From IMG/VR virus record IMGVR_UViG_3300009158_000031, positions 190,394 through 254,393 of that record: a stretch of DNA of 64,000 nt; one strand, 5' to 3'. The notes beneath the pieces were generated by a model. The model did no database searches, was not told the origin of the DNA, and saw only the letters and a program-made list of their open reading frames with translations. Shown here piece by piece: positions 11,518 to 39,325 of the stretch (positions are counted from its first letter, which is position 1; the number at the start of each line of letters is the position of its first letter). The translations under genes and the position numbers were made by a program.

Positions 11518-11769
11518 ATGAAAAAGAAATCTGAATTTTGCACATACGATTCATCAATGATTCGTACATCTCGTTATAACTTTGAAACTAAGGATTTAGA
11601 AGTAGAATTTAATGGAGGTACCACTTACAAATTCGAAAATGTAGATACCGTAGATTATCTAGCATTTGCAAATAGTGAGGAATCTATCGGAAAATCATTC
11701 AATCAGCACATTCGTAAATACGAAGGTAAAAAAACCTCAATAGAAAATCACTCACCAACACATGACTAA
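11518..11769 (+). CDS. KTSC-domain protein
   Basis: SSMI..SRYN....LEVEFNGG..Y....V...SIGKSFNQHIR. Confidence 0.85.
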   Translation: MKKKSEFCTYDSSMIRTSRYNFETKDLEVEFNGGTTYKFENVDTVDYLAFANSEESIGKSFNQHIRKYEGKKTSIENHSPTHD

Positions 11770-12004
11770 AAAACGTAAAACCGTTAAAATGAAAAAGGTC
11801 GATATGGAAAATCGACTCAAATGGTACTTCCATAAAAGATGGAACACTATGTACAAAAAATTCTACATTATTCCTTCTTTGTCTTGGACTTGGAGTGCTA
11901 GTGGAGATTTTATCGAACAAGGAGTATATGCTCCCATGTTTATTCTAAAATTAGAATGGTTGCATTTTGAAGTAGGTGTTTACAATTATCACGAAATGTA
12001 CTAA
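11762..12004 (+). CDS. hypothetical protein
   Basis: Operon ORF. Confidence 0.5.
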   Translation: MTKKRKTVKMKKVDMENRLKWYFHKRWNTMYKKFYIIPSLSWTWSASGDFIEQGVYAPMFILKLEWLHFEVGVYNYHEMY

Positions 12005-19835: not shown

Positions 19836-20067
19836 ATACCAATCACAAAAAGACAATTTACAAATAGCCTATGGATTCGATCATGCATTAGGTTATTGGT
19901 ACGACATGTGGGATACCAACCAACGAGAATCCGATGGATCTCCTCGACATATAGAAGAAGGATCTTCTATGAGGCGAATGTCTAGAGATACATTCGCTAG
20001 TCGACTAATGGAATTTCCCATATCACCTGATCATCTGCAAGCAATTGCACTAGATCTTCCCTTTTAA
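19828..20067 (+). CDS. hypothetical protein
   Basis: AYGFDHALGYWY; ends DLPF. Confidence 0.6.
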   Translation: MSRYQSQKDNLQIAYGFDHALGYWYDMWDTNQRESDGSPRHIEEGSSMRRMSRDTFASRLMEFPISPDHLQAIALDLPF

Positions 20068-20101
20068 CTCCTTCTCACCTTAAAAAATAAATACAACAAA
20101 A

Positions 20102-20491
20102 ATGGAAACGACAACAATCGTAGTGTTAAGCGTAGCAAGCACTCTAGTAATCATTGGACTAATAGCAATGGTAAACGGGTTACGTAAGGCACACAAACAA
20201 ATCACCCACCTATTAGAAACTTCAAATTCAAGTATTCGCCATCATGAAGAAATTCACGATCGAATAAGTGAAGAGAATGAAAACCTGAATCGAATCATTT
20301 GCACTATGGAAAATAACATCCATCGTCGTATAGATGAAACTCTACAACAAGCCGACCAGCAATATGCAAATATTTCTCGTCACGCTGAAGAAACCTGGAA
20401 AGAAAATCAATCCGATTTAGATCGTCGATTTGATCGTCTTTATAATAAAATATACGAGGCATTACCTCAATTGAAAGAAAAAACTAATTAA
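20102..20491 (+). CDS. membrane-anchored coiled-coil protein
   Basis: N-terminal TM, DRRFDRL. Confidence 0.7.
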   Translation: METTTIVVLSVASTLVIIGLIAMVNGLRKAHKQITHLLETSNSSIRHHEEIHDRISEENENLNRIICTMENNIHRRIDETLQQADQQYANISRHAEETWKENQSDLDRRFDRLYNKIYEALPQLKEKTN

Positions 20492-20512
20492 CAATTAATC
20501 GAGAAGGAGTTC

Positions 20513-20541
20513 AGAGAGGGTTCTAACGAACCCTCTCTTTT
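20513..20541 (+). terminator. intrinsic terminator
   Basis: AGAGAGGGTTC-TAAC-GAACCCTCTCT followed by T-tract. Confidence 0.85.
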
Positions 20542-20567
20542 CATATAAATTAAATATTCCTTATAAA

Positions 20568-21323
20568 ATGAAATCTATACTAATTGTAATTATGTTCTTG
20601 GCATCTACTGCCTTTGCACAAGATACTTCAAAGATCAATCCAATCAAAATACAAATTGGTCTTGGCGGAAATTATACTGATGGAAATGCTAAAATACTTG
20701 GATTCAATACCAACAATTCTATTACATATACCTCACTAAATCGTGAGTGGTCTTTGCTGCCATCATTTATTTACTCACAAGTACAACAAGATAATGAGTT
20801 CAAACCCAGACAGCGAGAACTATACATAACCGGTGCTGTTCAAGAAAGACGAGGTTCCGACAAAATTATTTCGGCTTTTGAACTAGAGACTTCATTAGTA
20901 AAACAAATCCGATTAAGAACATCAATTGGTCTTGGATGGAGTTTCGATATAATTCGAACACCTAAAACTAAATTCATCATATCCGAAGCCGCTGTATATG
21001 AATCATATTTATCAGATTTGATAATTGATAAAAACCTACAATCGCTTAGAGCATCTACTCGAATTAGATTTTCCACTAATGGGAAAGTCAATACCGATTT
21101 TGTAGCACTTATACAACCTTCAATATGGAATGATCGAGGAGTTAGTGCAGCTAATAATACAAATTCTCGCATATCTGCAACGATTGCTATACCAGTTACC
21201 AAGAAATTACAATTTGGAATAACCTCTACATTTATTGGATCTACCTATTCAAATTTCATTAATTCTGGAATCAATCCCGCTGACATAAATACAACTTTTT
21301 CACTCATATATAAAAATCTATAA
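20568..21323 (+). CDS. outer-membrane beta-barrel protein (DUF481-like)
   Basis: Signal peptide AFA|Q, GGNYTDGN, amphipathic strands, C-terminal FSLIYKNL. Confidence 0.7.
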   Translation: MKSILIVIMFLASTAFAQDTSKINPIKIQIGLGGNYTDGNAKILGFNTNNSITYTSLNREWSLLPSFIYSQVQQDNEFKPRQRELYITGAVQERRGSDKIISAFELETSLVKQIRLRTSIGLGWSFDIIRTPKTKFIISEAAVYESYLSDLIIDKNLQSLRASTRIRFSTNGKVNTDFVALIQPSIWNDRGVSAANNTNSRISATIAIPVTKKLQFGITSTFIGSTYSNFINSGINPADINTTFSLIYKNL

Positions 21324-21325
21324 AC

Positions 21326-21556
21326 ATGATAATATCAATAATTGGCTTAATCGCTACACTCATCACAATAGGATCATTCCTATTTAAAGAAATCAAAGAC
21401 ATTCGAATGGTTAATTTCATTGGCTGTTTGGTTTGGTTATTATATGGATCGTTAAAGCTCGATTTTCCGGTCATAACGGTAAATTCTGCTATTGCTCTGA
21501 TACACCTATATTCATTTATAAAATCCGAAGATGATAACAATTCTATCGGTAGCTAA
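21326..21556 (+). CDS. small membrane protein (YgjV/PQ-loop-like)
   Basis: SFLFK..IR.VN.IGC.W..YG. Confidence 0.65.
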   Translation: MIISIIGLIATLITIGSFLFKEIKDIRMVNFIGCLVWLLYGSLKLDFPVITVNSAIALIHLYSFIKSEDDNNSIGS

Positions 21557-21734
21557 TTTAGTTAATTATATTGTAATTGGTGCCATTTTGGCATTCATTT
21601 CCGATATAACTATGAGATACATTATCAAAAAACCTGAACTAGAATTTACTAACGTCGAAAGATGTGCCATCATTGCGCTTTGGCCTATATACGTGGCAAT
21701 CATTATATTAGGAAATTCAAAATCAAAAAAATAG
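21531..21734 (+). CDS. small membrane protein
   Basis: Two TM, LWP. Confidence 0.55.
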   Translation: MITILSVANLVNYIVIGAILAFISDITMRYIIKKPELEFTNVERCAIIALWPIYVAIIILGNSKSKK

Positions 21735-21738
21735 AAAC

Positions 21739-21957
21739 ATGCTAAATTATTTCAAACAACCTAAAACCCGAGCTATCATTTCCACTATATTGGTAGTTGT
21801 GGGAACCACTCTTTCCATCGAAGCTGCTCTATGGTTAGTATTCAATTATGGACGAGAGCTAATGGCCTTCACGGTTATTCTCGCTATGGCTTGGTTAAGT
21901 CGTAGTATATACTTTTCGTATTTGGAAAAATATCGCAAAGAAAAAGAAACAAAATAG
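21739..21957 (+). CDS. small membrane protein
   Basis: Two TM. Confidence 0.55.
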   Translation: MLNYFKQPKTRAIISTILVVVGTTLSIEAALWLVFNYGRELMAFTVILAMAWLSRSIYFSYLEKYRKEKETK

Positions 21958-21963
21958 TCAATC

Positions 21964-22197
21964 ATGCAATATTATATAGGCATATTACCAGAAGATCGAG
22001 GTCGACTTAGATCCACGATAGAGTTTTTAAATGACAATCCCAATTGGCGATGGCAGGTTAAAGTCTTATCAGAATTTGACGATCCTGATGGATATTATAC
22101 ATTCCAAATGGAAGGGAATGAGGAGACTTATCGACACTTTCTTCGACTCTCTACTAACGAAGGATTTGTCAAATCTCTTAATCATTATGAAGAGTAG
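21964..22197 (+). CDS. hypothetical protein
   Basis: Operon ORF. Confidence 0.55.
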   Translation: MQYYIGILPEDRGRLRSTIEFLNDNPNWRWQVKVLSEFDDPDGYYTFQMEGNEETYRHFLRLSTNEGFVKSLNHYEE

Positions 22198-22444
22198 TTG
22201 GTTCGTTTATATAGTTCGTTGCTCTGATGGAACTCTGTATACCGGAATCACCGTTGACCTTCAAAAACGAGTGGCCTCTCACAACTCCAAGAAAGGAGCT
22301 AAATATACTGCGACTCGAACTCCTGTCGAGTTAGTTTGGTCTCAACCTTCAGAAACGAGATCCACTGCCGCGAAAGAAGAGTGGAGAATAAAACAGCTTT
22401 CCCGTACAGAAAAACTCGCCTTAATAGATAATCTTATATTATAA
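22187..22444 (+). CDS. GIY-YIG nuclease (UPF0213/YhbQ-like)
   Basis: WFVYIVRCSDGTLYTGIT..R...HN..GAKYT; start moved to MKSSW. Confidence 0.9.
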   Translation: MKSSWFVYIVRCSDGTLYTGITVDLQKRVASHNSKKGAKYTATRTPVELVWSQPSETRSTAAKEEWRIKQLSRTEKLALIDNLIL

Positions 22445-22569
22445 TAATCTAGTACAGATCACTCCCTTGCAAGTAGAGTAAATAAAAAGTTTGCTCACTC
22501 TAAACACACTCTTCTAATATAATCTACTACATCTTATATAGGATAAACCGCTTTATATAGAAGGTAATA

Positions 22570-22900
22570 CGCTATATAAGGTAATAATCTATATAGATAA
22601 CTCTCCTCCTCGTCTGACTAGTCGTGGTGTTGTGAGCGGAGAAATCCGGTAAGCCACGGAGGAAGCCGGTATTTGCAGATCCGCTTATAGTGACACCTTT
22701 TGTTTTCCGCATTCTCACAAAGATTTGCCGCATATACCAACGAGCCGTTAAGTACCGAGGAATCCATAATCGTAATGGCTCTCAATCACCCAGGGCTCGT
22801 TGCTAACTCCCATCACCAAAGCTACTCCGTCCACAACCCGCCTACCCTTATATAGTGATAATTGGATCCGGTGGTAATTCCGCCTTACCTTATATAAGGA
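22570..22900 (+). ncRNA. GC-rich structured non-coding element of unknown class
   Basis: Several stems read by eye, including CAACGAGCC/GGCTCGTTG; no long ORF. Confidence 0.45.
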
Positions 22901-22925
22901 ATATTGAATCCAGTAGCGATTAAGA

Positions 22926-22987
22926 TGTTAATAACTTTCTCACAAAACATTTTTTTATTACAACCTTTTTTATTATATTTGTATATA
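22926..22987 (+). promoter_or_regulatory. promoter repeat copy 4
   Basis: TGTTAATAACTTT...TATTATATTTG. Confidence 0.8.
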
Positions 22988-23007
22988 CATAATAACTAAT
23001 ACACTAT

Positions 23008-23286
23008 ATGGAAGAACAAGAAGATTTTAATCAGGAACTCGATCCTGTACAAAAGGCCGAGTTAGAATTACAATATCAAGAAGAAATAGGAAAGGCCATG
23101 AGAAGTGCATTTGCTTATATAGAGGAAGATCTAGGCTGGGAGGCTTGGATCGAGAATCGAGTGATTGGTGACGCGGCCAAGAAGCGGAGAATCCTCGATA
23201 ATATGATGAAATGGTTTGCTTCTCCAGAGGTGGAGGAATATGAGAAATCCGCTCGCATCAAAAGGGCTATTGATACTCTCGTATAG
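23008..23286 (+). CDS. acidic protein with UVR-like C-terminal motif
   Basis: EEYEKSARIK. Confidence 0.6.
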   Translation: MEEQEDFNQELDPVQKAELELQYQEEIGKAMRSAFAYIEEDLGWEAWIENRVIGDAAKKRRILDNMMKWFASPEVEEYEKSARIKRAIDTLV

Positions 23287-23288
23287 GT

Positions 23289-23370
23289 TGTTAATAACTT
23301 TGTTAATAAGTTTTGAAACAAATAGTAAAATAAATTTTTTTATTCCACAAATAAGTATTATATTTATATA
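23289..23370 (+). promoter_or_regulatory. promoter repeat copy 5 (two tandem boxes)
   Basis: TGTTAATAAC at 23289, TGTTAATAAG at 23301, TATTCCACA at 23341. Confidence 0.8.
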
Positions 23371-23398
23371 TTATTTAATTAACTTAAAAAAGATCTAT

Positions 23399-23653
23399 AT
23401 GCAAATCAATCAAATTAAAACCGGTTCCTTTATTCGTAACAGCGGTGGATTTACCTTCCACGTAACACTTACCGAGAAGTTCGCTCACCTTCACCCTATC
23501 GATGATAACACATCTACCTCAACGAAGGTACTACCTATAGCGGTATTCAATCAGTTAATTCGTAATCACAACTTCGTTACCGTTACCAATCCCAATAACG
23601 CACACGAAAGAATTCTTACTAAATCATATGGATCAAGATTATTAACACAATAA
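23399..23653 (+). CDS. hypothetical early protein
   Basis: Start moved to MQINQ after the promoter. Confidence 0.6.
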   Translation: MQINQIKTGSFIRNSGGFTFHVTLTEKFAHLHPIDDNTSTSTKVLPIAVFNQLIRNHNFVTVTNPNNAHERILTKSYGSRLLTQ

Positions 23654-23716
23654 TGTTAATAACTTTCCCATCAAACATTTTTTTATACCAAAAAAAAGTA
23701 TTATATTTATACTATA
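23654..23716 (+). promoter_or_regulatory. promoter repeat copy 6
   Basis: Same architecture and spacing. Confidence 0.8.
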
Positions 23717-23749
23717 TTTAAAAATCAAATAAAACAAAAAAAATCAATT

Positions 23750-24067
23750 ATGGCAAAATCATCTAGAGGCGGATTAACAGTTTACGATAAACAAGATGTG
23801 GTAATATCACAATTCGCAAAAATCGTACGTAACGAACAATACAGAAAAGAACCAACATGGTTCGAACAACAGGTAATCGATTCTAAACAACGTACTGCGG
23901 ATTATCAAAAACGTATGGTGAACAACCCACCTCAACCCCGTATCTCACACTATAATCCAGACAATATCTTAAATCGCACCAGACACTTATCTGCGGAAGA
24001 TCGTAAAATCGCAATCAAACAATTTCTTAAAGAAGAAAAGGCTGCTAATAATTTAATCAATCAGTAA
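23750..24067 (+). CDS. hypothetical early protein
   Basis: ORF after promoter. Confidence 0.65.
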   Translation: MAKSSRGGLTVYDKQDVVISQFAKIVRNEQYRKEPTWFEQQVIDSKQRTADYQKRMVNNPPQPRISHYNPDNILNRTRHLSAEDRKIAIKQFLKEEKAANNLINQ

Positions 24068-24087
24068 TCTCTAAATAAAAAAAACAT

Positions 24088-24411
24088 ATGTCAGCAAGAC
24101 CACACTCCCTAAATGATGAATTACCTTCTAATCCAAATATTAGAAGAGATCAATACAAACGTATACTTGGTATTCTTAAAATACATCGTGATCGTCCTCA
24201 ATTAGCTTTCGATCTTATAAGAGATTACGCTAAAGGTGTAGATAAGGTGAAAACCGTTTTCCTATACCCCAATGGTACTGGTGATATCCCAACCGAAATT
24301 CGAGTAGTTTCTGAAGGTTCACATACCGAATCTATGGCTACACAAATCATGACTACCGTTTATTCATTTCCTTTCGAACGTCCTGAAATCGTTGAACCAC
24401 CCGTATTGTAG
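24088..24411 (+). CDS. hypothetical protein
   Basis: ORF with A-rich leader. Confidence 0.6.
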   Translation: MSARPHSLNDELPSNPNIRRDQYKRILGILKIHRDRPQLAFDLIRDYAKGVDKVKTVFLYPNGTGDIPTEIRVVSEGSHTESMATQIMTTVYSFPFERPEIVEPPVL

Positions 24412-24473
24412 AATACATATAATAATAAACCACTCCACTCTCACACAGACGGTGGACTAAAAACAACCAATCA

Positions 24474-25562
24474 ATGACAATATCTCAAAAGCAATTTAGT
24501 GACTTCCGAGAAGACGCACTAAAAAATCAACCACTCCGCAAGGAAATCGCACTAGCCGATATTCGTTTCGTCACTATGGATGCAATCGAATATGCCGGTT
24601 TAAACTTTGGACTTGCTCGTCCTGCACTTAAAGATCTAATGCGTATATTAGGTGTAAACATGAATATCGAATCTCGCTTATCTGAATCTATCGGTGAGGA
24701 TGGTGCGAGGAACTTCCTTAATGGTCTAAGATCTGCACTATCTAAATCAGCCGGATCTATTATCTTATCGGTTACACCAGATCGCATCATTCAACGTATC
24801 ACTAAAGGTGGAAAAGAAACTTCACTCTTTACTGCACCTACCTACTTCAATACAGTAGATCGCTTTATGAATACCAACTCCGGTATGGAAATAAAGGATA
24901 TGCACTTCAATCGCGAAACAGGTGGAATATCGCTCTCTGCGGCTTCACCCAAATCAGAATTTAACGTGGGTAACTTTAACGATGAGGTTTTCCATGGAGG
25001 ATTAAATCTCTCTATCACTGCCGATGGAATTAAAGCCGCTCCTTATCTACACCGTCTAGTGTGTACGAACGGAATGGTAACACGTTCTTTCGAGGAATCC
25101 TTTAATCTTAATCGCAACACCACTGAAAGTTGGACTTCCTTCTGGCAGAATCTAGAAAGAATCGAACACTCTGGATTTCAACCCATCGCCTTTACCAACA
25201 AGGTACTCGCTGCGAAAAACACTACTGCTTCTTTCGCTGAGATGGAAAGATCAATGAACCTCATCCTAGGTAATTCAAAATGTGATCTAGACAATCTACC
25301 CCAATTCATCAATTACCGTCCGACCTTCAATCGTCTACACTCTACAGGAATCGATACCCTGAAGTTAACACCAGGACAGAAACGCAATCTACGTACTGGC
25401 TTAACCATGTGGGATTGCATTAATGGAGTTACCGATTTTGCCTCACACAATTATGGTTTTGAAAAAACAGCTAACTGTGATCGCCACTTACAGTTACAAG
25501 CTGGTGATATCCTCACTAAGGACTTCGACACACAAAACCTAATCCTGAATCAACCTTACTAA
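24474..25562 (+). CDS. DUF932-like phage/plasmid protein
   Basis: LHRLVCTNGM; TMWDCINGVTDFASH. Confidence 0.7.
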   Translation: MTISQKQFSDFREDALKNQPLRKEIALADIRFVTMDAIEYAGLNFGLARPALKDLMRILGVNMNIESRLSESIGEDGARNFLNGLRSALSKSAGSIILSVTPDRIIQRITKGGKETSLFTAPTYFNTVDRFMNTNSGMEIKDMHFNRETGGISLSAASPKSEFNVGNFNDEVFHGGLNLSITADGIKAAPYLHRLVCTNGMVTRSFEESFNLNRNTTESWTSFWQNLERIEHSGFQPIAFTNKVLAAKNTTASFAEMERSMNLILGNSKCDLDNLPQFINYRPTFNRLHSTGIDTLKLTPGQKRNLRTGLTMWDCINGVTDFASHNYGFEKTANCDRHLQLQAGDILTKDFDTQNLILNQPY

Positions 25563-25612
25563 GAGTAAGGAACTGCGAGTGGAGAAAACCACTCTAATTT
25601 GATAATACCACT

Positions 25613-25639
25613 AAGGCTGCTCACTAGAGTGGCCTTTTT
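25613..25639 (+). terminator. intrinsic terminator
   Basis: AAGGCTGCTC-ACTA-GAGTGGCCTT then TTT. Confidence 0.75.
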
Positions 25640-25682
25640 GTGGTTTACACAGCGAGACTGCCCTATTACTCACCTTTACCAC

Positions 25683-26030
25683 CTAGAAGAGACTAGATAC
25701 CTTCTAGTCTCACCTAATAAGGGCCTGTACAGATCTAGACCAGCAAAACAACATCCTACTAGATCTAGATCTTAACAAGAAGAGCCTAGATAGACTAGAT
25801 GAGTACTAGCAGTGTACTAGTAGGATCTATTAAGGCTAGAAGCAGACTAGAAGAGCTCAATATATCCACATATAGGACAGAAGAGTGCTATAAAGACTCA
25901 TATATACTCATTATATCACCGATAGATCATCTAGAAGCCGCTGAGGTGAGCTATAGGGACTAGAAAGTCAAAAAAAGGTCACAAAAAGCCAAAAAGGATC
26001 ACTTTTAGCCAAAAAGGATCAAAAAGGCCA
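25683..26030. repeat. helically phased CTAG array and phased A-tract repeats
   Basis: 14 CTAG within 25683-25963; AGCCAAAAAGGATCA at 25987 and 26007. Confidence 0.8.
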
Positions 26031-26583
26031 CATGTGCTCCTCGTAATCCATGTCTTGTCCGCGTTAACGTCCCGTGGAAGTCCAGTCCTGGCTAGGGCCC
26101 ATGAAATTCCGGACATTTTTGACCCTCGAAACTTTGGGCCGGAAATAAGGCGACGCACATCCCACTCTATACGGAAAGCCCTTTCTGGTAACGCGAGTAA
26201 GAGAAGCCCAAAGGCCTTTTTAAAAAAATTTTCCAGACTATATAGGATCTCTCGAAACTCATTGACTAATATATAGAGTAGCCGGTGAGTCTTTTTAAAC
26301 CTTTCTGACTCTTTGTTTTGCTCGAAGGAGAAGGTACTGACAGAGTGAAGACGGCTACTTTGTTTACAGTAATCTGTTAATAGTAAACTCTTACCCGACG
26401 CAAACGACGAGGGGCCATCCAGACTTCTCTGATGGTTTATTTCGCATCCCTCTTTTATACTCTCGGTATAAATTCGAGACCTCGATTGAACTGCCGATAC
26501 CGCGACTCGCATCTGATAACCACGATAAATAAACCATATACTCGATCTTACCGGCGAATCGTGTAAGTCATATAAAAACTAAT

Positions 26584-26910
26584 ATGGAAATGAAAACTGT
26601 AATGTACTGTTCAACTATTGAAGATGCACGAGAGTGTATTGAAGATGATACGACGATATTTCCGCTTCTCGAAAGAGCTCTGATTACCATGTGGAAGACA
26701 ACCTCTCACTCTGAGGAAGTTCTAGAAATCCGTTGTATGGATGTAGGTGCTTCTATGTGGGTAACTCTCCGTCGAAGTGAGTGTGATGAAGTATGGGAGA
26801 AGATCATCACTTGGAGAAGTGGAAGAGAAGAGTGGGAAGAACTGACGGTACTTAAAGATATTCGAGATGAGTGGTTCAACTCTAAGAAGGTTGTGGAGCC
26901 AGTCCATTGA
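26584..26910 (+). CDS. hypothetical protein
   Basis: ORF after CATATAA motif; weak UVR-like end. Confidence 0.6.
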   Translation: MEMKTVMYCSTIEDARECIEDDTTIFPLLERALITMWKTTSHSEEVLEIRCMDVGASMWVTLRRSECDEVWEKIITWRSGREEWEELTVLKDIRDEWFNSKKVVEPVH

Positions 26911-27016
26911 AAAAAAAAAGCCCTCCAGCGTTCAAACTCTGAGTTTCAGGAATAAATAGAAATATAAACGAACAAAAAAGCGCGCAGCGGCTTCCACCTC
27001 TGAGTACCAAGAATAA

Positions 27017-27394
27017 ATGAAATCAATACCTACATATCACGAATTCCTTAATGAGACCGTCTCATTTAATACCGATACTACTGGTCGTGAAGATTGGGAT
27101 GATGATCTAAAGAAACATTCTAGAGATTTTACTCAATCTATAGTAATAATGAGTCCGATGGATTTCTTGAAGAGAGTTCAATATCACCGATTTGAGATTA
27201 ATAAATCTAAAGTGGCTAATTATGTTAAAGAATTTCGTGGTAATGTCAAAGGAATTCCAGCACCAACCATGTGGTTCTCTGATAAGTTTCAATACGATAA
27301 AGGACTTGCTCCTGCTTTTCATGATGGATCTCATCGCATGCTAGCTCTACAAGAAGTAGGGATACGAGAAGTTCCGGTTAAAATTATATACTAA
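27017..27394 (+). CDS. ParB/Srx-like protein with capsid-targeting-like N-terminus
   Basis: MKSIPTYHEFLNE; DGSHRMLAL...VPV. Confidence 0.65.
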   Translation: MKSIPTYHEFLNETVSFNTDTTGREDWDDDLKKHSRDFTQSIVIMSPMDFLKRVQYHRFEINKSKVANYVKEFRGNVKGIPAPTMWFSDKFQYDKGLAPAFHDGSHRMLALQEVGIREVPVKIIY

Positions 27395-27395
27395 G

Positions 27396-28016
27396 ATGAA
27401 AAACATTCAAACATACGAAAGCTTCTTAAATGAACTTCGACATTCAAAAGAGTTTTTAATAGACCTATTTTCTAAAATGGATATTTTAGATAATGATGTA
27501 TACAAAAACATTTTAATCCATTACATTGAACAACCACAAAATTTAGAAAAACAAGAGTTCATTGATTTAGTTTCATGGTTGATCCAGAATAAAAACAAGT
27601 ACAGTGAAGTACTAAAGCCTAAAAATGGATATGCATACAGAGGAACTTCAATAACTCCTGATATGTTTCATAAATTAAAAAATGGATTATCAAAAAAAGA
27701 AGGTGGTATAAGCATATTTAACTTTCCTTATACCAGCGAATCAGAAGCACAAAGTTGGACATATGATTATAAAGTAGCAATGAGGTTTGCGGATAAAGGT
27801 CTTTTAAATAACCCTAGATTAGAAAAAGGAGCTAGACCAGCTATTTTAAGAGCTAAGATAGATGATACATTTGTAGGTAATCCTAAGTTGACTGGTCCCA
27901 TAGCTGACCGATTAAGTCTGAAGTCCGAAAAGGAAATATTTCATTTAGGGAATTCTATAAAAGATGCTGAATGGATGATATTCTCAGCCGATATAGAATT
28001 AGGAAAATTTAATTAG
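27396..28016 (+). CDS. ADP-ribosyltransferase-fold protein with capsid-targeting-like N-terminus
   Basis: MKNIQTYESFLNE; YRG, QSWT...A..FA, EKE (R-S-E triad). Confidence 0.6.
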   Translation: MKNIQTYESFLNELRHSKEFLIDLFSKMDILDNDVYKNILIHYIEQPQNLEKQEFIDLVSWLIQNKNKYSEVLKPKNGYAYRGTSITPDMFHKLKNGLSKKEGGISIFNFPYTSESEAQSWTYDYKVAMRFADKGLLNNPRLEKGARPAILRAKIDDTFVGNPKLTGPIADRLSLKSEKEIFHLGNSIKDAEWMIFSADIELGKFN

Positions 28017-34357: not shown

Positions 34358-37300
34358 ATGAGAAACAAACATATGAAAAATCCTATTTTAATTTGCCTGT
34401 TACTATTTAATTTAATTGTAATTGGACAAACAACACCTAAAGAAAGATACATAAACAATTCTGATTATCTTTCTAAAAACTCCTTAGTCGATTACAAAAG
34501 CTATTACGGAGATTCCATACAAGGATTCGACGAAGCAGCTATGAAAGTTGAACTACTAAGACGAAACGTTTTTGGTTCAGAATACATCAACTACATTGCT
34601 CTTGTAAAAAGAGAATGGGTAAATCAAAAGTACGGTATCAAACCTGTACTACCTATCAATTCAAACAACCGACCTATTGGAGGTCCTAACTCAGTTAATT
34701 CACCTGGTAATGCTTGTGTGAATGAAGACTTTGAGCTTACTGCACCTGGAGCTTATAATGGAATGAATTCTGTTTTAGGATGGACAATTCAAAGTGGACA
34801 AAATACTTCCAATATCTGTTGTGGAAATCCTACATATGGTGCTGGCTGTGTTGCTAATCCTATTGCTAATTGGAATGCAGGTAGTCCTGAATTTTCTATT
34901 GTTGCTACTCCAATACTACCTGCTCCTAGTTGTGCTAATCCTCCTGGATTTAGTATTGACAATGTATCAATACCTAATTCACCTCTTGGCGGTAACCGAG
35001 TTGCAAGACTACAAAACTCATGTCCAACCGGTTTGATGACTCGAATTATGACACAATTTCCTGTTTCAAATTCTAATACCTTATTTCAATTTTGTTATGC
35101 TGGTTCATGGGATGGTGTTCATGAATGTTGTGGACAACCTGCTTTTAGAATCGATATGTATAATTGTACAGGTTCATTAATCCCAATACCATGTGCCAAT
35201 GTAAGCCTAACTCCTTCCGGACAATCTTGTCAAAGTGGAGTTCCTGGATATCAGGTAACCAGTGGAGTTTCATGGGTTAATTGGCAAACAAAATATATTG
35301 ACTTAACTCCTTATATTGGTCAGTGTATTAGAATTGTGGTAACTTGCTCAGATTGTTCTTATTCTGGACATCATGGAACTGCTTATTTTGATGCAAGATG
35401 CGGTGGTCAATTAGTTGGAGTTGGATTAGGTGGAGTTGGTGGAAACATTGCAGGACCTGTTAGTTATTGTGCTGGTTCAAATCAAGCTATTATTGCCGCA
35501 CCATTGGGATACTCGTCATATCAATGGATATCTCCTATCACAGGAACAATTCCTGCTAATGCAGGAGGTACAGCTCCAGTATTAACCATAAGTCCAGTAG
35601 TTGCAGGTTTAGTGTATACAGTTCAGTTAAACTCACCATCAGGGTGTTCTTATATTGCAACCAATACAATCATGCCTACTCTTGTAAACATTGCAGGTAT
35701 TGGTTCAGGCACAAGTTGTGCAGGAGGATCAAGTGGAACGGGTACTGTTCAAGGTAATGGCAGTGGCACAGGATACAATTATACTTGGGTAAATTCAAAT
35801 AATGCTGTAGTTGGTACCTCAGCAACAGTAAGTGGACTGCTTCCAGGAACATATAGCGTAACTATAACTGGTCTTGGCGCTGCAGGATGTGGTTCAGCAA
35901 CATCAACTATATCAATAGGAGTTGGAATACCTCAAATGCAAAATCTATTAAAACCGTATTGTGGTTCTCAAGCCTATTTAAGTGTAACGGGTAATAGTGT
36001 TCAGTGGTCTACCAACAATACAGCTATCTCCGCTCCATTAGGAGTGGCAATGGGATACACAGTAAACAATCCAGTACAGGCTTCAGTATACACAGTTACC
36101 TATACTTCATTACAAAATTGTAATGAAGCAGCTTCATTCACCCTAATACCATCTCCGCCGGGCAGTATATCATTACTAACTACTTCTGTTTGTTTAAACT
36201 CGACAAATGGCAGTGGAACTATTAATCTAACTCCTGCATCTGGTTCTCCTCCTGGAGCTAATTCATATTCAGTATGGAATTCTAATAATACTCCGGTTTA
36301 CAATTCATCATTGTCTCCTACTAATCAAAATAATTATTTGTTTGGAAACATGGGAACCGGTAGTTATCAAGTAAGAGTATTTGATGGTTCCTGTGCATAC
36401 ACAACTTCCTTTATTATACCTACTCATGTATTTTCTCCTACATTAAGTCCAACCTCAACAACTCTATGTCCTGGTGGAGGTATTGCAGCCGGAGTAGTAT
36501 TTAGTATTCCACCATCATTATCTCAATACACTTACTCTTGGACACCTAATATCTTTTTAGCAGGAAACACTCAACAATCAACGATTATCATACCAAATCT
36601 TGCAGTAGGTACGCAATCAAATATAACTTACTCAGTTGTAATTACTCCTACTGCTATTAATTGTCCGATGACTCGTACATTAAATTTATGGGCAATCAAT
36701 CCACCAATTCCAACTATTACTGCAATACCTAATATGTGTAACAATATGCTTCCATATCAAGTATTGGCTAATCCCAGTGGTGGTATCTTTACCGGAGTTG
36801 GAATGAGTACATTAGGTTTAATCTCTCCGACTGCTTCACTATTAGGAATCAATAACTTTACATATGCCATTTCAATTAGTACTTGCGCATCATCTAATAC
36901 TGGAAGTTATCAGGTATCATATTTCAATACTTCATCATTAAGCTCTTCAATAAATCCTATATGTTCTACTAATTCAACAATAAATCTTATGACTATTGTT
37001 CAGAATACCTTAGGATCTTGGTCAGGTAATTATATAACGAATAACATATTCAATCCAGCAAATCTAAATGGAGTATACTCATTAACCTACAATAATTTAT
37101 CAACACCAAATCCTACAGTATGTCCTTCATCTACTCAAATGAATATATCGGTTACTAATACAATAATTCCGACTATTGCAAATTCCAATCCATTCTGTAC
37201 GAATGCCTCCTCTTTTGTATTGATCGCTAATCCAAATGGAGGAATCTGGTCTAACAATTCTGCAGTGAGCGGTTTAGGTATTGTAACTCCTTCATTGACA

Positions 37301-39325
37301 TCTCCTACAAATACAACGGTTAATTATGTCGTTAATGTTGGTCCATGTATAAACACAAACACATTCAACATATATCCATCAACTTTCAATACGGCTTCTT
37401 TAACTGGATCTATCCCTAATTTATGCGTAACGAGCTCATCAATAAATCTAATGTCAATCGTACAAAATACGACTGGATCTTGGTCAGGAATGAATGTTAC
37501 TCAAAACATATTCAACCCTTCAGGATTACCGACCGGAAATTATACTTTAACATACAATACCAACTCGGCTCCTAATGTTACTCTATGTCCAGATAACCGA
37601 ACAATAAACATATCGGTTCTTAATCCGGCATCTCCGAACATTACTACATTCGGACCTATATGTAGCAAAGATGCTATTATGCAAATGACCGTTACTCCTA
37701 ATTCTGGTAGTTGGATTTCTACTCCATATCTAAACATTAATGGAATATTAAATCCTTCGCTATGTCCTATTGGAATTAATGCCATTCAATATGTAATAGG
37801 AACTAATACTTGTTCGGCTCAACAAACAAAAACCTTTGTGGTTGAGATGTTCATTCCATCAACGATAACAAATCAAATACCTGACTTGTGTAATACCAGC
37901 TCTCCCATAAATCTTAATTCATATTCTGGTTTTCCTGGATCTTGGTCAGGATTAGGAATCAATGGTTCAATGTTTACTCCATCGAATTCAGGAACATTAA
38001 TTCTAGTACATACCACATCATCATCTAGTGGTTTATGTCCTAGTACGTCAAGCATATCAGTTAGAGTATATTCATTACAATCTCCAGTAATAATCAAGCC
38101 AAATTCTGTATGTAACACATATGCGCCTTTCCAATTACAAGTAAATCCAATCGGTGGTATATTCGGAGGTAATGGATCTAATACTAACGGAATTTTTAAT
38201 CCAGCATATGGAGCGATAGGAAACAATATAATTAATTACAGCATTTCTGCCGGTCCTTGTATAGCATATGCACAGACTACTGTTAATATTGAGAAATTTA
38301 TATCGGCTGATCTAGATCGATACCCTAAAACCGTTTATTGTAAAGGTACTGAATATCCTTTTAATCTGAATTCGTTAGTCAAAAATCCAAATTATAATTG
38401 GTCTGGTCCTGGAGTAAATGGTTATATGTTCGATCCACAAATGGCAAACATCGGAAACAACCTAATATATTATCGAACGCATTCTGCACCAACGGCTTCA
38501 TTATGTCCGGATGAAAAATCATTTAACATAAGGGTTGCTCAAATAAGTAAACCCATCATATCGCTATCTGATTCAATTGGTTGTGTTCCTCTTAGAGTAA
38601 TTCTCAATTCAAACGAAAATACTGGATTATCTTCTTGGAAATTTAGTAATGGATATTCTAGTGAAGCCAATTCTCTTGCATATACATTTACTTCAAGCGG
38701 AATACATTCAATAATATTCTCATATATCAATGATGAAGGTTGTGTATCGCCAAATCAAATGATTACTCTTATTAGAGTTGATGAGGTACCTTTTCCCAAG
38801 TTTCAATTACCAAAATCCATTTATGCAGGAGATTCAGAAATCCAAGCAATAAATCTAACTCCTAATGTAGGAAGTTACACTTACACATGGATGGTATCTA
38901 ATGGATATTCAGTAAACACAATTAATCTTGCATACGATCCCAAGAAAATAGGCAAGTACGAAATAACATTAATTGCAAAGACGGTTAATGGATGCACGGC
39001 ATCTACTAGAAAAATGATAGAGATACAAAACGAATTTGAAGTACATATCCCAAATACTTTCACTCCTAATAGAGATGGTCTCAACGATTATTTTCTTCCA
39101 GTATTTTCTGACTATGGAGTTGAGTTATCTTTTTATACACTAGAGATTTTCGATCGATGGGATCACTTAATTTATAGATCAATCGATCCTAAAAAAGGAT
39201 GGGATGGAAAAGCCAAAAATGAATTATGTCAACAAGGATCCTATGTATACAGACTTAAGTTTTCTGATAAAGAGAAGAATGTGTATGAGAAGATTGGACA
39301 TGTTCTCCTTTTAGGATCCGATTAA
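34358..39325 (+). CDS. large secreted adhesin-like protein with PKD-like repeats and T9SS type-B (gliding-motility/CHU_C) C-terminal domain
   Basis: Signal peptide then Gln; Cys/Ser/Thr/Asn-rich repeats; IPNTFTPNRDGLND...IFDRW...GWDG...GSYVY. Confidence 0.9.
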   Translation: MRNKHMKNPILICLLLFNLIVIGQTTPKERYINNSDYLSKNSLVDYKSYYGDSIQGFDEAAMKVELLRRNVFGSEYINYIALVKREWVNQKYGIKPVLPINSNNRPIGGPNSVNSPGNACVNEDFELTAPGAYNGMNSVLGWTIQSGQNTSNICCGNPTYGAGCVANPIANWNAGSPEFSIVATPILPAPSCANPPGFSIDNVSIPNSPLGGNRVARLQNSCPTGLMTRIMTQFPVSNSNTLFQFCYAGSWDGVHECCGQPAFRIDMYNCTGSLIPIPCANVSLTPSGQSCQSGVPGYQVTSGVSWVNWQTKYIDLTPYIGQCIRIVVTCSDCSYSGHHGTAYFDARCGGQLVGVGLGGVGGNIAGPVSYCAGSNQAIIAAPLGYSSYQWISPITGTIPANAGGTAPVLTISPVVAGLVYTVQLNSPSGCSYIATNTIMPTLVNIAGIGSGTSCAGGSSGTGTVQGNGSGTGYNYTWVNSNNAVVGTSATVSGLLPGTYSVTITGLGAAGCGSATSTISIGVGIPQMQNLLKPYCGSQAYLSVTGNSVQWSTNNTAISAPLGVAMGYTVNNPVQASVYTVTYTSLQNCNEAASFTLIPSPPGSISLLTTSVCLNSTNGSGTINLTPASGSPPGANSYSVWNSNNTPVYNSSLSPTNQNNYLFGNMGTGSYQVRVFDGSCAYTTSFIIPTHVFSPTLSPTSTTLCPGGGIAAGVVFSIPPSLSQYTYSWTPNIFLAGNTQQSTIIIPNLAVGTQSNITYSVVITPTAINCPMTRTLNLWAINPPIPTITAIPNMCNNMLPYQVLANPSGGIFTGVGMSTLGLISPTASLLGINNFTYAISISTCASSNTGSYQVSYFNTSSLSSSINPICSTNSTINLMTIVQNTLGSWSGNYITNNIFNPANLNGVYSLTYNNLSTPNPTVCPSSTQMNISVTNTIIPTIANSNPFCTNASSFVLIANPNGGIWSNNSAVSGLGIVTPSLTSPTNTTVNYVVNVGPCINTNTFNIYPSTFNTASLTGSIPNLCVTSSSINLMSIVQNTTGSWSGMNVTQNIFNPSGLPTGNYTLTYNTNSAPNVTLCPDNRTINISVLNPASPNITTFGPICSKDAIMQMTVTPNSGSWISTPYLNINGILNPSLCPIGINAIQYVIGTNTCSAQQTKTFVVEMFIPSTITNQIPDLCNTSSPINLNSYSGFPGSWSGLGINGSMFTPSNSGTLILVHTTSSSSGLCPSTSSISVRVYSLQSPVIIKPNSVCNTYAPFQLQVNPIGGIFGGNGSNTNGIFNPAYGAIGNNIINYSISAGPCIAYAQTTVNIEKFISADLDRYPKTVYCKGTEYPFNLNSLVKNPNYNWSGPGVNGYMFDPQMANIGNNLIYYRTHSAPTASLCPDEKSFNIRVAQISKPIISLSDSIGCVPLRVILNSNENTGLSSWKFSNGYSSEANSLAYTFTSSGIHSIIFSYINDEGCVSPNQMITLIRVDEVPFPKFQLPKSIYAGDSEIQAINLTPNVGSYTYTWMVSNGYSVNTINLAYDPKKIGKYEITLIAKTVNGCTASTRKMIEIQNEFEVHIPNTFTPNRDGLNDYFLPVFSDYGVELSFYTLEIFDRWDHLIYRSIDPKKGWDGKAKNELCQQGSYVYRLKFSDKEKNVYEKIGHVLLLGSD

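What the first reader, a model, noticed from the sequence alone, without database searches (positions are those of the whole stretch)
22445..22920. Unexplained structured non-coding element with alternative pairings and TATATAG-type flanks
GGTGTTGTGAGCGGA (22626-40) can pair with 22680-97 or, exclusively, with 22703-20. There is an inner stem 22643-50/22665-73 and a perfect CAACGAGCC/GGCTCGTTG stem (22738-46/22794-802). G-U pairs favour a + strand RNA. It is bracketed by a 12-bp inverted repeat (TATATAAGGTAA 22573 / TTACCTTATATA 22885) and several TATATAG copies, also seen near 26239. It could be a novel ncRNA or switch, or an iteron-like DNA site linked to the 25.7-kb locus.
Basis: partly seen in the sequence, partly recalled or inferred. 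Interest (0 to 1): 0.65.

Follow-up and report, generated by a model that had tools for sequence, protein, structure and literature searches.

The report
Fixed-length conserved non-coding phage module
Between two early genes of an uncultivated freshwater T4-like jumbo phage lies a single-copy, 381-bp non-coding module that keeps exactly the same length in about 17 relatives; it looks more like a DNA site where proteins assemble (for example a replication origin) than like the RNA switch first proposed, but its function is unproven.

Summary
The proposed RNA switch does not hold. There is no Rfam match, and folding is no better than shuffles. In 17 distinct homologues the first alternative pairing, the inner stem and the "perfect" 9-bp stem are broken without compensation. 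The consensus fold is no better than column shuffles. Four lake metatranscriptomes cover neighbouring genes but not the element.

What is real is a single-copy module, 22530-22910. It is non-coding: stops in every frame and no codon periodicity. It is more conserved than 4-fold sites of the flanking genes. It has zero indels in 20 sequences that differ by 12-26%. Invariant 6-20-nt blocks alternate with variable spacers of fixed length, with a roughly 20-bp periodicity. Four palindromic boxes lie on the left and two on the right.

My best reading (confidence about 0.4) is a cis-acting nucleoprotein DNA site, origin-like. A + strand ncRNA remains a live rival (about 0.3), because a 91-nt hairpin domain is compatible in all homologues and the core is a GC-rich island.

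The parts
22190..22444 (+). Upstream gene: a small GIY-YIG (URI-domain only) nuclease. The listed ORF starts at 22031, but relatives match only from residue about 55.
   Evidence: Pfam PF01541, E = 2.4e-18; relatives align from residue 55-57. In every relative except the window, an extra variable small gene plus a terminator lies between this gene and the element.
22431..22529 (.). Left junction. It is AT-rich, poorly conserved and carries indels. It holds the nearly invariant TATTATAATAATCTAGTA and a weak promoter-like pair, TTTGCY then 18 nt then (Y/W)AATATAA.
   Evidence: Alignment of 20 sequences; identity to distant relatives is 0.59-0.66. The promoter reading is inference only.
22530..22600 (.). 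Left array of four boxes at 17-19 bp spacing: B1 22533-41 CTTATATAG, B2 22552-60 TTTATATAG, B3 22571-79 GCTATATAA, B4 22588-97 TCTATATAGA (a palindrome).
   Evidence: TRF period 17; sites listed. B1-B3 cores are kept in nearly all relatives; B4 is degenerate in some.
22601..22837 (.). GC-rich core (up to 50% GC in a 33% GC genome), single copy. Invariant blocks alternate with variable spacers of fixed length.
   Evidence: It is among the most GC-rich IGRs in the genome. The blocks are unique in the genome. Identity is 0.74-0.87, against 0.56-0.77 at 4-fold sites. No indels.
22607..22620 (.). Invariant block CCTCGTCTGACTAG, which contains the palindrome GACTAGTC.
   Evidence: Invariant in all 17-20 sequences.
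22630..22720 (+). Inverted-repeat or hairpin domain. TTGTGRGCGGA pairs with TCCG..(4-nt bulge)..YTCACAA. It encloses two CGGAG-N4-CCG repeats 20 nt apart and a small hairpin (22683-90 with 22697-703, loop TGACAC).
   Evidence: 99-100% of cells paired in 17 sequences but nearly invariant. The small hairpin is 90% paired, with one pair CG:7 / AU:6. G-U pairs occur only on the + strand. Local alifold z = -1.95 on + and -1.6 on -.
22725..22750 (.). Hypervariable block whose length never changes.
   Evidence: Longest variable run is 26 columns, with zero gaps.
22805..22857 (.). C-rich, highly conserved stretch (ACTCCCATCACCAAAGCTAC ... CCGCCTACCCTTATATAGTG), predicted to be unpaired.
   Evidence: No complementary site elsewhere in the phage genome at 4 or fewer mismatches in 20.
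22838..22921 (.). Two 42-nt tandem repeats, each carrying a box (B5 22846-55 CTTATATAGT; B6 22887-98 CCTTATATAAGG, a palindrome) and a TGGATCCGGTGG-like half.
   Evidence: the repeat finder family D4, 74% identity; conserved in relatives.
22921..23007 (+). One copy of the genome's repeated early-promoter cassette (TGTTAATAACTTT...ATTTTTTTAT...TATTATATTTGTATATAC). It serves the ORF at 23008 and is not part of the single-copy module.
   Evidence: About 20 blast copies; of 37 TGTTAATAA sites, about 25 carry the full cassette, most just upstream of an ATG.
23008..23286 (+). Downstream 92-aa acidic protein of unknown function. It was used as the anchor to fetch homologous loci.
   Evidence: No Pfam, PHROG or NCBIfam hit; 41 protein clusters at 73-100% identity.

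Best explanation
The element is a single-copy cis-acting DNA module of 381 bp (22530-22910). I propose that proteins assemble on it in a fixed geometry, and the closest analogue is an iteron-bearing replication origin.

Proposed mechanism:
- Dimeric DNA-binding protein(s) occupy the palindromic yTTATATAr boxes, four on the left at 17-19 bp spacing and two on the right 42 bp apart.
- Further factors read the invariant 6-20-nt blocks of the GC-rich core, which recur about every 20 bp (roughly two helical turns).
- The spacers between sites are free to change sequence but not length, so all sites stay in register.
- The AT-rich flanks, including the adjacent early promoter, could supply melting or a priming transcript, as at T4 origins.

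Shown here: non-coding; single copy; purifying selection; box arrays; the block and fixed-spacer pattern with zero indels; about 20-bp periodicity; no conserved overall RNA fold.

Inferred, not shown: that proteins bind; which proteins; and that the function is replication rather than another architectural role such as recombination, packaging or transcription control.
For: - Zero indels over 381 bp in 20 sequences with 12-26% divergence, while both flanks have indels. About half the columns vary (172 of 336).
- Conserved runs of up to 14 nt at a strict threshold (invariant blocks up to about 20 nt) alternate with variable runs of up to 26 nt. Conservation periodicity peaks at 19.75 bp: p = 0.0045 for the 17-23 bp range, 0.03 for any period from 5 to 60 bp.
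- The box cluster is unique in the genome, and box positions are conserved in relatives.
- The core is more conserved than 4-fold sites of the neighbouring genes.
- It is not coding: stops in all frames, in-frame stops in L153 and L167, no 3-nt periodicity, no conserved start.
- No RNA-family or structure signal. Rfam is blank. Alifold z = +0.5 on both strands with 17 sequences. The covariation term is only -0.85 kcal/mol. Per-sequence folds disagree. Transitions to transversions are 56:66.
- In relatives a strong intrinsic terminator sits immediately upstream, and the next promoter sits downstream. Conserved transcription through the element is therefore not expected.
- No metatranscriptome contig lies on it in 4 runs that do cover neighbouring genes.
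- Precedent: T4 oriE carries evenly spaced 12-nt iterons conserved in related phages (PMC3016281). This phage is T4-like, with a gp23-type capsid gene.
- From my own knowledge, not tested here: enterobacterial oriC is the textbook case of conserved blocks separated by spacers of fixed length and free sequence.
Against: - No binding protein or initiator gene was identified. The neighbours have no informative family hit, and the 362-aa gene is only DUF932-like.
- The core is GC-rich rather than AT-rich, and no unwinding element was shown.
- Cumulative GC skew shows no turning point here, though with nearly all genes on one strand this is uninformative.
- One relative (L171) lacks the module at this position, so it is dispensable or relocatable.
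- The 17-19 bp box spacing is off the 10.5-bp helical repeat, and no 10-11 bp periodicity is seen.
- The periodicity p-value is modest, and the range was chosen after seeing the spectrum.
- The transcript data are assembled contigs at low depth. They also miss the two flanking genes, so the absence is weak evidence.
- GC-rich islands in AT-rich genomes are typical of RNA genes.
Confidence: 0.4

Rival explanations
1. It is a gene for a + strand non-coding RNA of roughly 250-380 nt. The RNA would start just after the left box array, or from the AATATAA motif at 22514-20. It would have a 5' hairpin domain (22630-22720) and a conserved, C-rich, single-stranded 3' half that acts by base pairing or by binding protein.
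For: - It is a GC-rich island (50% against 33%) and one of the few GC-rich non-coding IGRs in the genome.
- It is conserved above neutral sites.
- The 11-bp interrupted helix 22630-40/22706-20 is paired in all 17 sequences. Its changes go to G-U, which is valid only on the + strand. The enclosed hairpin has one CG/AU swap. The structure as a whole is 94.9% paired, against 39-47% when partners are slid.
- Compatible helices are slightly more frequent on the + strand than in shuffles (p 0.04-0.16) and not on the - strand.
- The boxes resemble the phage's putative late-promoter core TATATAA(W), and four of them sit in tandem directly upstream.
Against: - No Rfam hit even at E of 10 or less.
- The consensus energy of the 255-nt core is only -19.9 kcal/mol, with a -0.85 covariation term, and z is about +0.5 against shuffles.
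- The well-paired helices are almost invariant, so they carry no information, and that structure was derived from these same sequences.
- Predicted folds differ between relatives.
- No terminator lies at the 3' end.
- TATATAG precedes only 1 of 299 ORFs, so it is not a working promoter form elsewhere. The flanks of the boxes (yT..) differ from those of the late-type motif (rgaTATATAAw).
- Zero indels, even in a 26-nt hypervariable block, is unusual for RNA.
- No transcript contigs in 4 RNA runs.
Confidence: 0.3
2. It is a cluster of late-promoter-like boxes that works at the level of transcription: for example as a decoy, sink or entry site for the late transcription machinery, or as a regulatory region for the adjacent early units. 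It would not be an origin and would not make a functional RNA.
For: The phage's likely late-type motif is (r)gaTATATAA(w), 15-29 nt upstream of many structural-gene starts, with a second motif CATATAAw. The boxes are one-base relatives of it. The element abuts an early promoter.
Against: This does not explain 240 bp of conserved, GC-rich, fixed-length core between the arrays. The box flanks differ from the gene-proximal motif. No such cluster exists anywhere else in the genome.
Confidence: 0.12
3. It is a mobile or recombination-related DNA: a miniature transposable element with terminal inverted repeats, an invertible promoter segment, an attP-like site, or a retron/DGR template.
For: A 12-bp inverted repeat brackets about 300 bp in the window. 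Repeated boxes on both sides of a core recall the attP arms. The element lies in a gene-shuffling region next to a GIY-YIG nuclease.
Against: - It is single copy in the genome.
- The 12-bp repeat is not conserved.
- All 20 homologues have the same orientation and the same position.
- The record holds no tyrosine integrase, reverse transcriptase or single-subunit RNA polymerase.
- Two conserved patterns have no match in 185,579 prokaryote genomes.
Confidence: 0.05
4. It is a decaying remnant of a gene or of foreign DNA with no function of its own, conserved only because divergence is recent; or it is a small unconventional ORF.
For: The 20-27 kb stretch has atypical GC content and GC skew and carries bacterial-type genes (DUF481, GIY-YIG), which suggests acquired DNA. 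One frame (22700-22855) is open in most sequences.
Against: The element is more conserved than 4-fold sites. Invariant blocks of 14-23 nt and zero indels argue for constraint. Substitutions are even over codon positions, and there are in-frame stops and no conserved start.
Confidence: 0.08

Closest known systems
Iteron-type and oriC-type replication origins (T4 oriE iterons, lambda ori, R6K gamma, enterobacterial oriC)
   Same: Short repeats in evenly spaced arrays; conserved recognition blocks separated by spacers of fixed length and free sequence; intergenic, single copy, conserved in syntenic position in related phages. T4 oriE has evenly spaced 12-nt repeats, and it depends on an early promoter (PMC3016281).
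   Different: No sequence similarity to any of them. No initiator gene next to it. No clear DnaA boxes (only 6-8 of 9 matches by eye). The core is GC-rich, not AT-rich. Origin activity is untested. Even for T4 oriE the role of the iterons is unproven.
Structured phage and bacterial ncRNAs found as GC-rich intergenic islands (Rfam families; T4 stable RNAs C and D, from memory)
   Same: Non-coding, GC-rich relative to the genome, conserved, single copy, with some + strand-specific pairing potential.
   Different: No Rfam match, no covariation-supported fold, no transcript contigs, no length variation at all.
PeSL (promoter-early stem-loop) cassettes of T4-type hyperplastic regions (PMC2839356, PMC4122927)
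   Same: The last 85 bp (22921-23007) is one of about 25 copies of an early-promoter cassette that flanks small ORFs. The neighbourhood shows cassette gain and loss, as described for PeSL-mediated shuffling.
   Different: The 381-bp module itself is single copy and unrelated in sequence to the cassette. Most copies here lack the stem-loop.
lambda-type attP sites
   Same: A core flanked on both sides by repeated protein-binding sites, a few hundred bp long, sensitive to spacing.
   Different: No integrase in the record, no host match, and a T4-like lytic genome type.
T4-type late promoters (TATAAATA)
   Same: The boxes share the TATATA core with this phage's gene-proximal motif TATATAA(W).
   Different: The boxes end in G or AG, have different upstream bases, are often palindromic, are clustered, and do not precede ORFs.

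Membership tests
Any Rfam family (release 15) | Covariance-model match at or near the gathering score | tested here: not met
   Only two tRNAs in the whole window. In 22300-23100, with E up to 10, only two chance lncRNA-fragment matches.
Riboswitch / attenuator with alternative pairings | Mutually exclusive helices conserved across homologues, with compensatory changes | tested here: not met
   Alternative 1 is 54-76% paired and broken in 13 of 17 sequences. Alternative 2 is kept but invariant.
Riboswitch / attenuator with alternative pairings | Lies in a 5' leader between a promoter and the regulated ORF, with a terminator or a sequestered start site | tested here: not met
   The promoter cassette of the downstream ORF lies after the element. 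No terminator-like site lies in or after it.
Structured ncRNA (generic) | Consensus fold better than shuffled alignments, with helix-level covariation | tested here: not met
   z = +0.5 on both strands with 17 sequences. Covariation term -0.85 kcal/mol, and 1 of 36 pairs compensatory. No covarying helices.
Structured ncRNA (generic) | A transcript is present | tested here: inconclusive
   No contig on 21938-23277 in 4 metatranscriptomes, although 21594-21828 and 23400-25000 are covered. These are low-depth assembled contigs, not reads.
Iteron-bearing replication origin | Array of short repeats at regular spacing | tested here: met
   Four boxes at 17-19 bp and two 42-nt repeats, conserved in relatives.
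Iteron-bearing replication origin | Conserved sites separated by spacers of conserved length | tested here: met
   Zero indels in 381 bp across 20 sequences; about 20-bp periodicity of conservation.
Iteron-bearing replication origin | Cognate initiator gene nearby, or known initiator boxes | tested here: not met
   Neighbouring proteins have no informative family hit.
Iteron-bearing replication origin | Replication starts here | not testable with these tools
   Needs marker-frequency or plasmid-replication assays in infected cells. GC skew is uninformative here.
Protein-coding small ORF | Open frame with a conserved start and third-position variability | tested here: not met
   The longest frame free of stops in all sequences is 40 codons. 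There are in-frame stops in L153 and L167, no conserved start, and no 3-nt periodicity.
MITE / transposon with terminal inverted repeats | Multiple copies and conserved terminal repeats | tested here: not met
   Single copy; the 12-bp repeat is not conserved.
Invertible DNA switch | Both orientations present, and a recombinase nearby | tested here: not met
   All 20 homologues have the same orientation; no tyrosine recombinase in the record.
attP | Integrase gene and identity to a host attB | tested here: not met
   No PF00589 match; two conserved patterns are absent from genome contigs.
Retron / DGR template | Reverse transcriptase in the genome | tested here: not met
   No PF00078 match in the record, which is 83% complete.
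PeSL-like early-promoter cassette (applies to 22921-23007 only) | Multi-copy conserved promoter unit upstream of small ORFs in variable regions | tested here: met
   About 20-25 copies, each ending 5-30 nt before an ATG; cassette indels between relatives.

The most novel reading that the evidence does not exclude
The module encodes a new kind of late-expressed phage RNA, about 250-380 nt long. It would be launched from tandem late-promoter-like boxes. It would have a 91-nt 5' hairpin domain and an invariant, C-rich, unstructured 3' half, and it would work through primary sequence: sequestering a host or phage protein, or pairing with G-rich targets. That would explain strong block conservation without a conserved overall fold.
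Probability: 0.25. Interest if true: 0.7.

Novelty: new member of a known kind. Interest (0 to 1): 0.4.

Why it matters
Replication origins and other cis-acting sites of T4-like and jumbo phages are poorly defined. Even for T4 oriE the role of the iterons is unresolved. This is a sharply bounded, length-invariant, block-and-spacer module with unique box arrays. It is conserved across a clade of freshwater phages, which makes it a concrete and testable candidate for such a site. If it proves to be transcribed instead, it would be a new phage RNA. It also shows that attractive hairpins and alternative pairings in a single sequence disappear once about 17 homologues are compared.

Tried and rejected
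- **RNA family and single-sequence folds:** Rfam at gathering and at E up to 10 gave nothing. Single-sequence folds were not significant.
- **Searches that found no further relatives:** INPHARED phages by DNA and by two proteins gave nothing useful. Whole records of 12 contigs that share only the GIY-YIG gene lack the element and show no synteny. IMG/VR pattern scans found only the same three contigs.
- **Host attB or prophage:** two patterns are absent from genome contigs.
- **Metagenome 17-mer scan:** mostly random hits. Only six were true homologues. The random loci, including one gut-metagenome contig, were not used further.
- **T7-like promoter idea** (TAATACG..TATA): no single-subunit RNA polymerase in the record, but the control genomes also did not ring, so this is weak.
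- **Retron/DGR, attP, inverton, MITE:** rejected.
- **Small ORF 22700-22855 and a 40-codon minus-strand frame:** rejected.
- **10.5-bp periodicity:** absent.
- **GC-skew origin signal:** none.
- **Link to the 25.6-26.6 kb CTAG-rich region:** no shared motif beyond TATATAG and one GACTAG.
- **Antisense target of the C-rich block in the phage genome:** none at 4 or fewer mismatches in 20.
- **Not done:** no structure or complex prediction was run, because no candidate binding protein emerged.

Full report
**Setting**

The window is bases 190394-254393 of a 254-kb IMG/VR virus record, CheckV estimate 83% complete. GC is about 33%, and nearly all genes are on the + strand: 191 + strand and 4 - strand ORFs of 150 aa or more. 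It encodes a T4 gp23-type major capsid protein. The window also holds a thymidylate synthase, an RNA ligase and two tRNAs. So this is an uncultivated T4-like jumbo myovirus. The runs that hold it are freshwater and lake metagenomes.

The finding sits in the 563-bp gap between two genes. Upstream is a small GIY-YIG nuclease gene ending at 22444 (Pfam E = 2.4e-18). Downstream is a 92-aa ORF starting at 23008.

**Observation check**

TATATAG is not enriched in the window overall (18 found, 16.7 expected) or in the genome (42 sites, near expectation). It is strongly clustered, though. The element holds six TATATA(R) boxes within 381 bp, and no other 381-bp window of the genome holds more than two (Poisson 2.5e-8, about 2e-5 after correcting for the number of windows). 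Several nearby copies (22208, 23116) are simply Tyr-Ile codons inside genes.

The pairing potential of the single sequence is not exceptional: MFE z = -1.3 on the + strand and -0.9 on the - strand.

**What the 563 bp consists of**

The last 85 bp (22921-23007) is one copy of a repeated unit: TGTTAATAACTTT...ATTTTTTTATTCCAC...TATTATATTTGTATATAC. It occurs about 20-25 times in the genome, each time just upstream of an ATG. It is an early-promoter cassette of the kind described as PeSL in T4-type hyperplastic regions (PMC2839356, PMC4122927). Its TATATTTG fits the Bacteroidota -7 box TAnnTTTG. That suggests a Bacteroidota host, but this is my inference and was not tested.

The rest is unique in the genome. 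From left to right it contains:
- four boxes at 17-19 bp spacing (22533-22597);
- a GC-rich core (up to 50% GC, against a median of 35% for the richest 150 nt of other IGRs);
- two 42-nt tandem repeats, each with a box (22838-22921).

**Homologues**

IMG/VR held two identical contigs and one at 76% identity. A 17-mer scan of metagenome contigs added four more sequence types. The downstream 92-aa protein has 41 clusters at 73-100% identity. Twelve look-ups of their contigs gave loci L152-L172. All but one carry the element directly upstream.

In total there are 20 sequences, 17-18 of them distinct, at 74-88% identity to the window. In all relatives a variable small gene followed by a strong intrinsic terminator lies between the GIY-YIG gene and the element; the window lacks it. 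In L171 a tape-measure-like gene abuts the promoter cassette, and the module is absent.

**It is functional and it is not coding**

Identity of the core to four relatives is 0.74-0.87. The 4-fold degenerate sites of the flanking genes in the same genome pairs are at 0.56-0.77.

All six frames carry stops. The longest frame free of stops in every sequence is 40 codons. The 52-codon frame 22700-22855 has no conserved start and has in-frame stops in L153 and L167. Its substitutions fall evenly on the three codon positions. By contrast, the flanking genes show the expected third-position excess.

**Tests of the RNA hypothesis**

- Rfam gives nothing, even at E up to 10.
The inner stem keeps only its CCG/CGG core. 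The 'perfect' 9-bp stem keeps its three central pairs in 1-2 of 17, with no compensation (the same picture with 6 sequences).
- RNAalifold on the 255-nt core gives -19.9 kcal/mol with a covariation term of -0.85, and 1 of 36 pairs compensatory.
- Against column-shuffled alignments, z = +0.5 on both strands (-0.5 with five sequences).
- A brute-force search for helices compatible in all sequences finds slightly more than shuffles on the + strand (p 0.04-0.16) and fewer on the - strand.
- Pairwise covariation yields only isolated pairs, not helices.
- Individual MFE folds of the 5' half fall into at least three different shapes.
- Among biallelic columns, transitions do not dominate (56 against 66 transversions).

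What survives is one domain, 22630-22720. TTGTGRGCGGA pairs with TCCG...YTCACAA in all 17 sequences. The few changes there go to G-U, which is tolerated only on the + strand. The enclosed small hairpin with loop TGACAC is 90% paired and has one CG/AU swap. These helices are almost invariant, and I derived the structure from the same sequences. The tool's own caveat therefore applies: this neither proves nor excludes an RNA.

**Expression**

Four lake metatranscriptomes, held as assembled contigs, place pieces on 21594-21828 and 23400-25000. None lies anywhere between 21938 and 23277. That gap also covers the two flanking genes, and depth is low. So this argues only against a very abundant stable RNA.

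No terminator-like site lies in or after the element. In relatives a terminator precedes it.

**DNA-level features**

The most striking result is that 22530-22910 has no indel in any of the 20 sequences. About half of its columns vary. Both flanks do show indels.

Invariant blocks alternate with variable runs of up to 26 nt whose length never changes. The blocks include CCTCGTCTGACTAG, TTGTGRGCGGAG, CCGGTATTTGC, TTTTCCGYAT..TCACAAAGATT, ACCGAG, TCGTAAYGGCTC and CCGCCTACCCTTATATAGTG. The conservation profile has its strongest periodicity at 19.75 bp. Against shuffled run orders, p = 0.0045 within 17-23 bp and 0.03 for any period from 5 to 60 bp. There is no 10-11 bp signal.

The boxes are palindromic or nearly so (CTATATAG, CCTTATATAAGG). 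Their positions are conserved, although B4 is degenerate in some relatives.

They resemble the gene-proximal motifs of this phage but are distinct from them. Those motifs are (r)gaTATATAA(w), 15-29 nt before many ATGs, and CATATAA(w). TATATAG precedes only 1 of 299 ORFs.

**Interpretation**

Conserved recognition blocks in strict register, separated by spacers free in sequence but fixed in length and flanked by arrays of palindromic repeats, is the signature of a DNA site on which a multi-protein complex assembles. The classical example, from my own knowledge, is enterobacterial oriC. Within the T4 family, oriE carries evenly spaced iterons conserved in related phages, and it depends on an early promoter (PMC3016281).

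I therefore rank a cis-acting nucleoprotein site, origin-like, first (0.4). Against it:
- no initiator or binding protein was found;
- the core is GC-rich;
- skew is uninformative;
- one relative lacks the module.

A + strand ncRNA is the main rival (0.3). In its favour are the GC-rich island, the compatible 91-nt domain and the promoter-like boxes just upstream.

Other readings rank lower:
- A transcription-level role of the box cluster: 0.12.
- A neutral remnant or small ORF: 0.08.
- Mobile or recombination elements: 0.05. The record has no reverse transcriptase or integrase. The element is single copy, has a single orientation, and has no host match.

The proposed link to the 25.7-kb locus is not supported.

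**Limits**

All homologues come from one narrow clade. Expression data are contigs only. The periodicity range was chosen after seeing the spectrum. 

Noticed in passing
window 22926, 23289/23301, 23654, 28472?, 39329, 39912, 42445, 43025, 48288, 58811, and about 15 more in the genome: An 85-100 bp early-promoter cassette (TGTTAATAACTTT...ATTTTTTTATTCCAC...TATTATATTTGTATATAC) is repeated about 25 times, each copy just before an ATG. A few copies carry a terminator hairpin inside. It resembles the PeSL cassettes of T4-type phages, and its TATATTTG fits a Bacteroidota -7 box.
   Followed up: partly
between window 22434 and 22431 (absent in the window); L145:122-487, L051 (reverse-complemented as), L042:147-458, L052 about 11670-11980; paralogue-like start at window 27396: Relatives carry a variable small gene here. 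Several start with the same MKHIHT(F/Y)EEFLNE and the same 5' leader but have unrelated C-terminal parts; others have a collagen-like ORF. Each is followed by a strong terminator. The window has lost the cassette. The same leader and N-terminus recur at window 27390-27434.
   Followed up: partly
window 25563-26583: A second GC-rich stretch (43-54% GC) with no + strand ORF. It has the densest CTAG cluster in the genome (16 per kb), GACTAGA five times, 20-nt tandem repeats (AAAAAGGATCAC...), three TATATAG copies, and one lone minus-strand ORF (25979-26512, 177 aa, no family hit). It is conserved at about 80% in L051.
   Followed up: partly
genome-wide, e.g. G000:C1:12539, 13124, 24604, 62995, 76094, 93264, 101682, 112546, 123310, 128909: Two motifs are enriched just upstream of ORFs: CATATAA(w), 39 times within 45 nt of a start (9.7-fold), and (r)gaTATATAA(w), 15-29 nt upstream of many genes in the structural region. 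They are probably middle and late promoter classes analogous to T4 TATAAATA.
   Followed up: partly
L171:1-1600: One relative has a tape-measure-like gene fragment and a 70-aa ORF directly before the promoter cassette of the 92-aa gene. Homology to the window starts only at 22903. This is either a different genome arrangement or a chimeric assembly.
   Followed up: partly
left ends of L053, L152, L154, L158, L160, L165, L166, L169, L170, L172: About 10 of 21 metagenome contigs that carry the 92-aa gene break inside the 381-bp module, near 22530-22590 or 22727-22775. That is more than a uniform break-point model would give. The likely cause is strain microdiversity in the box array and the hypervariable block, but physical DNA ends are not excluded.
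   Followed up: no
window 20000-27000: This stretch has negative GC skew and higher GC than the rest of the genome. It carries bacterial-type genes (a DUF481 outer-membrane-like protein at 20568-21323, the GIY-YIG gene, and a DUF932-like 362-aa protein at 24474-25562), which suggests an acquired island.
   Followed up: no
window 34358-39325: A 1655-aa ORF with no PHROG match.
   Followed up: no
window 22641-44, 22648-55, 22661-64, 22677-88: Variation inside the module is mosaic. Short blocks exist in two or three alternative versions of equal length (for example GTAAGCCN against AGAAAAGN, and GATCCGCTTATA against GGGGTATCACGA). These recombine independently of overall relatedness, which suggests frequent gene conversion among co-circulating phages.
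   Followed up: partly
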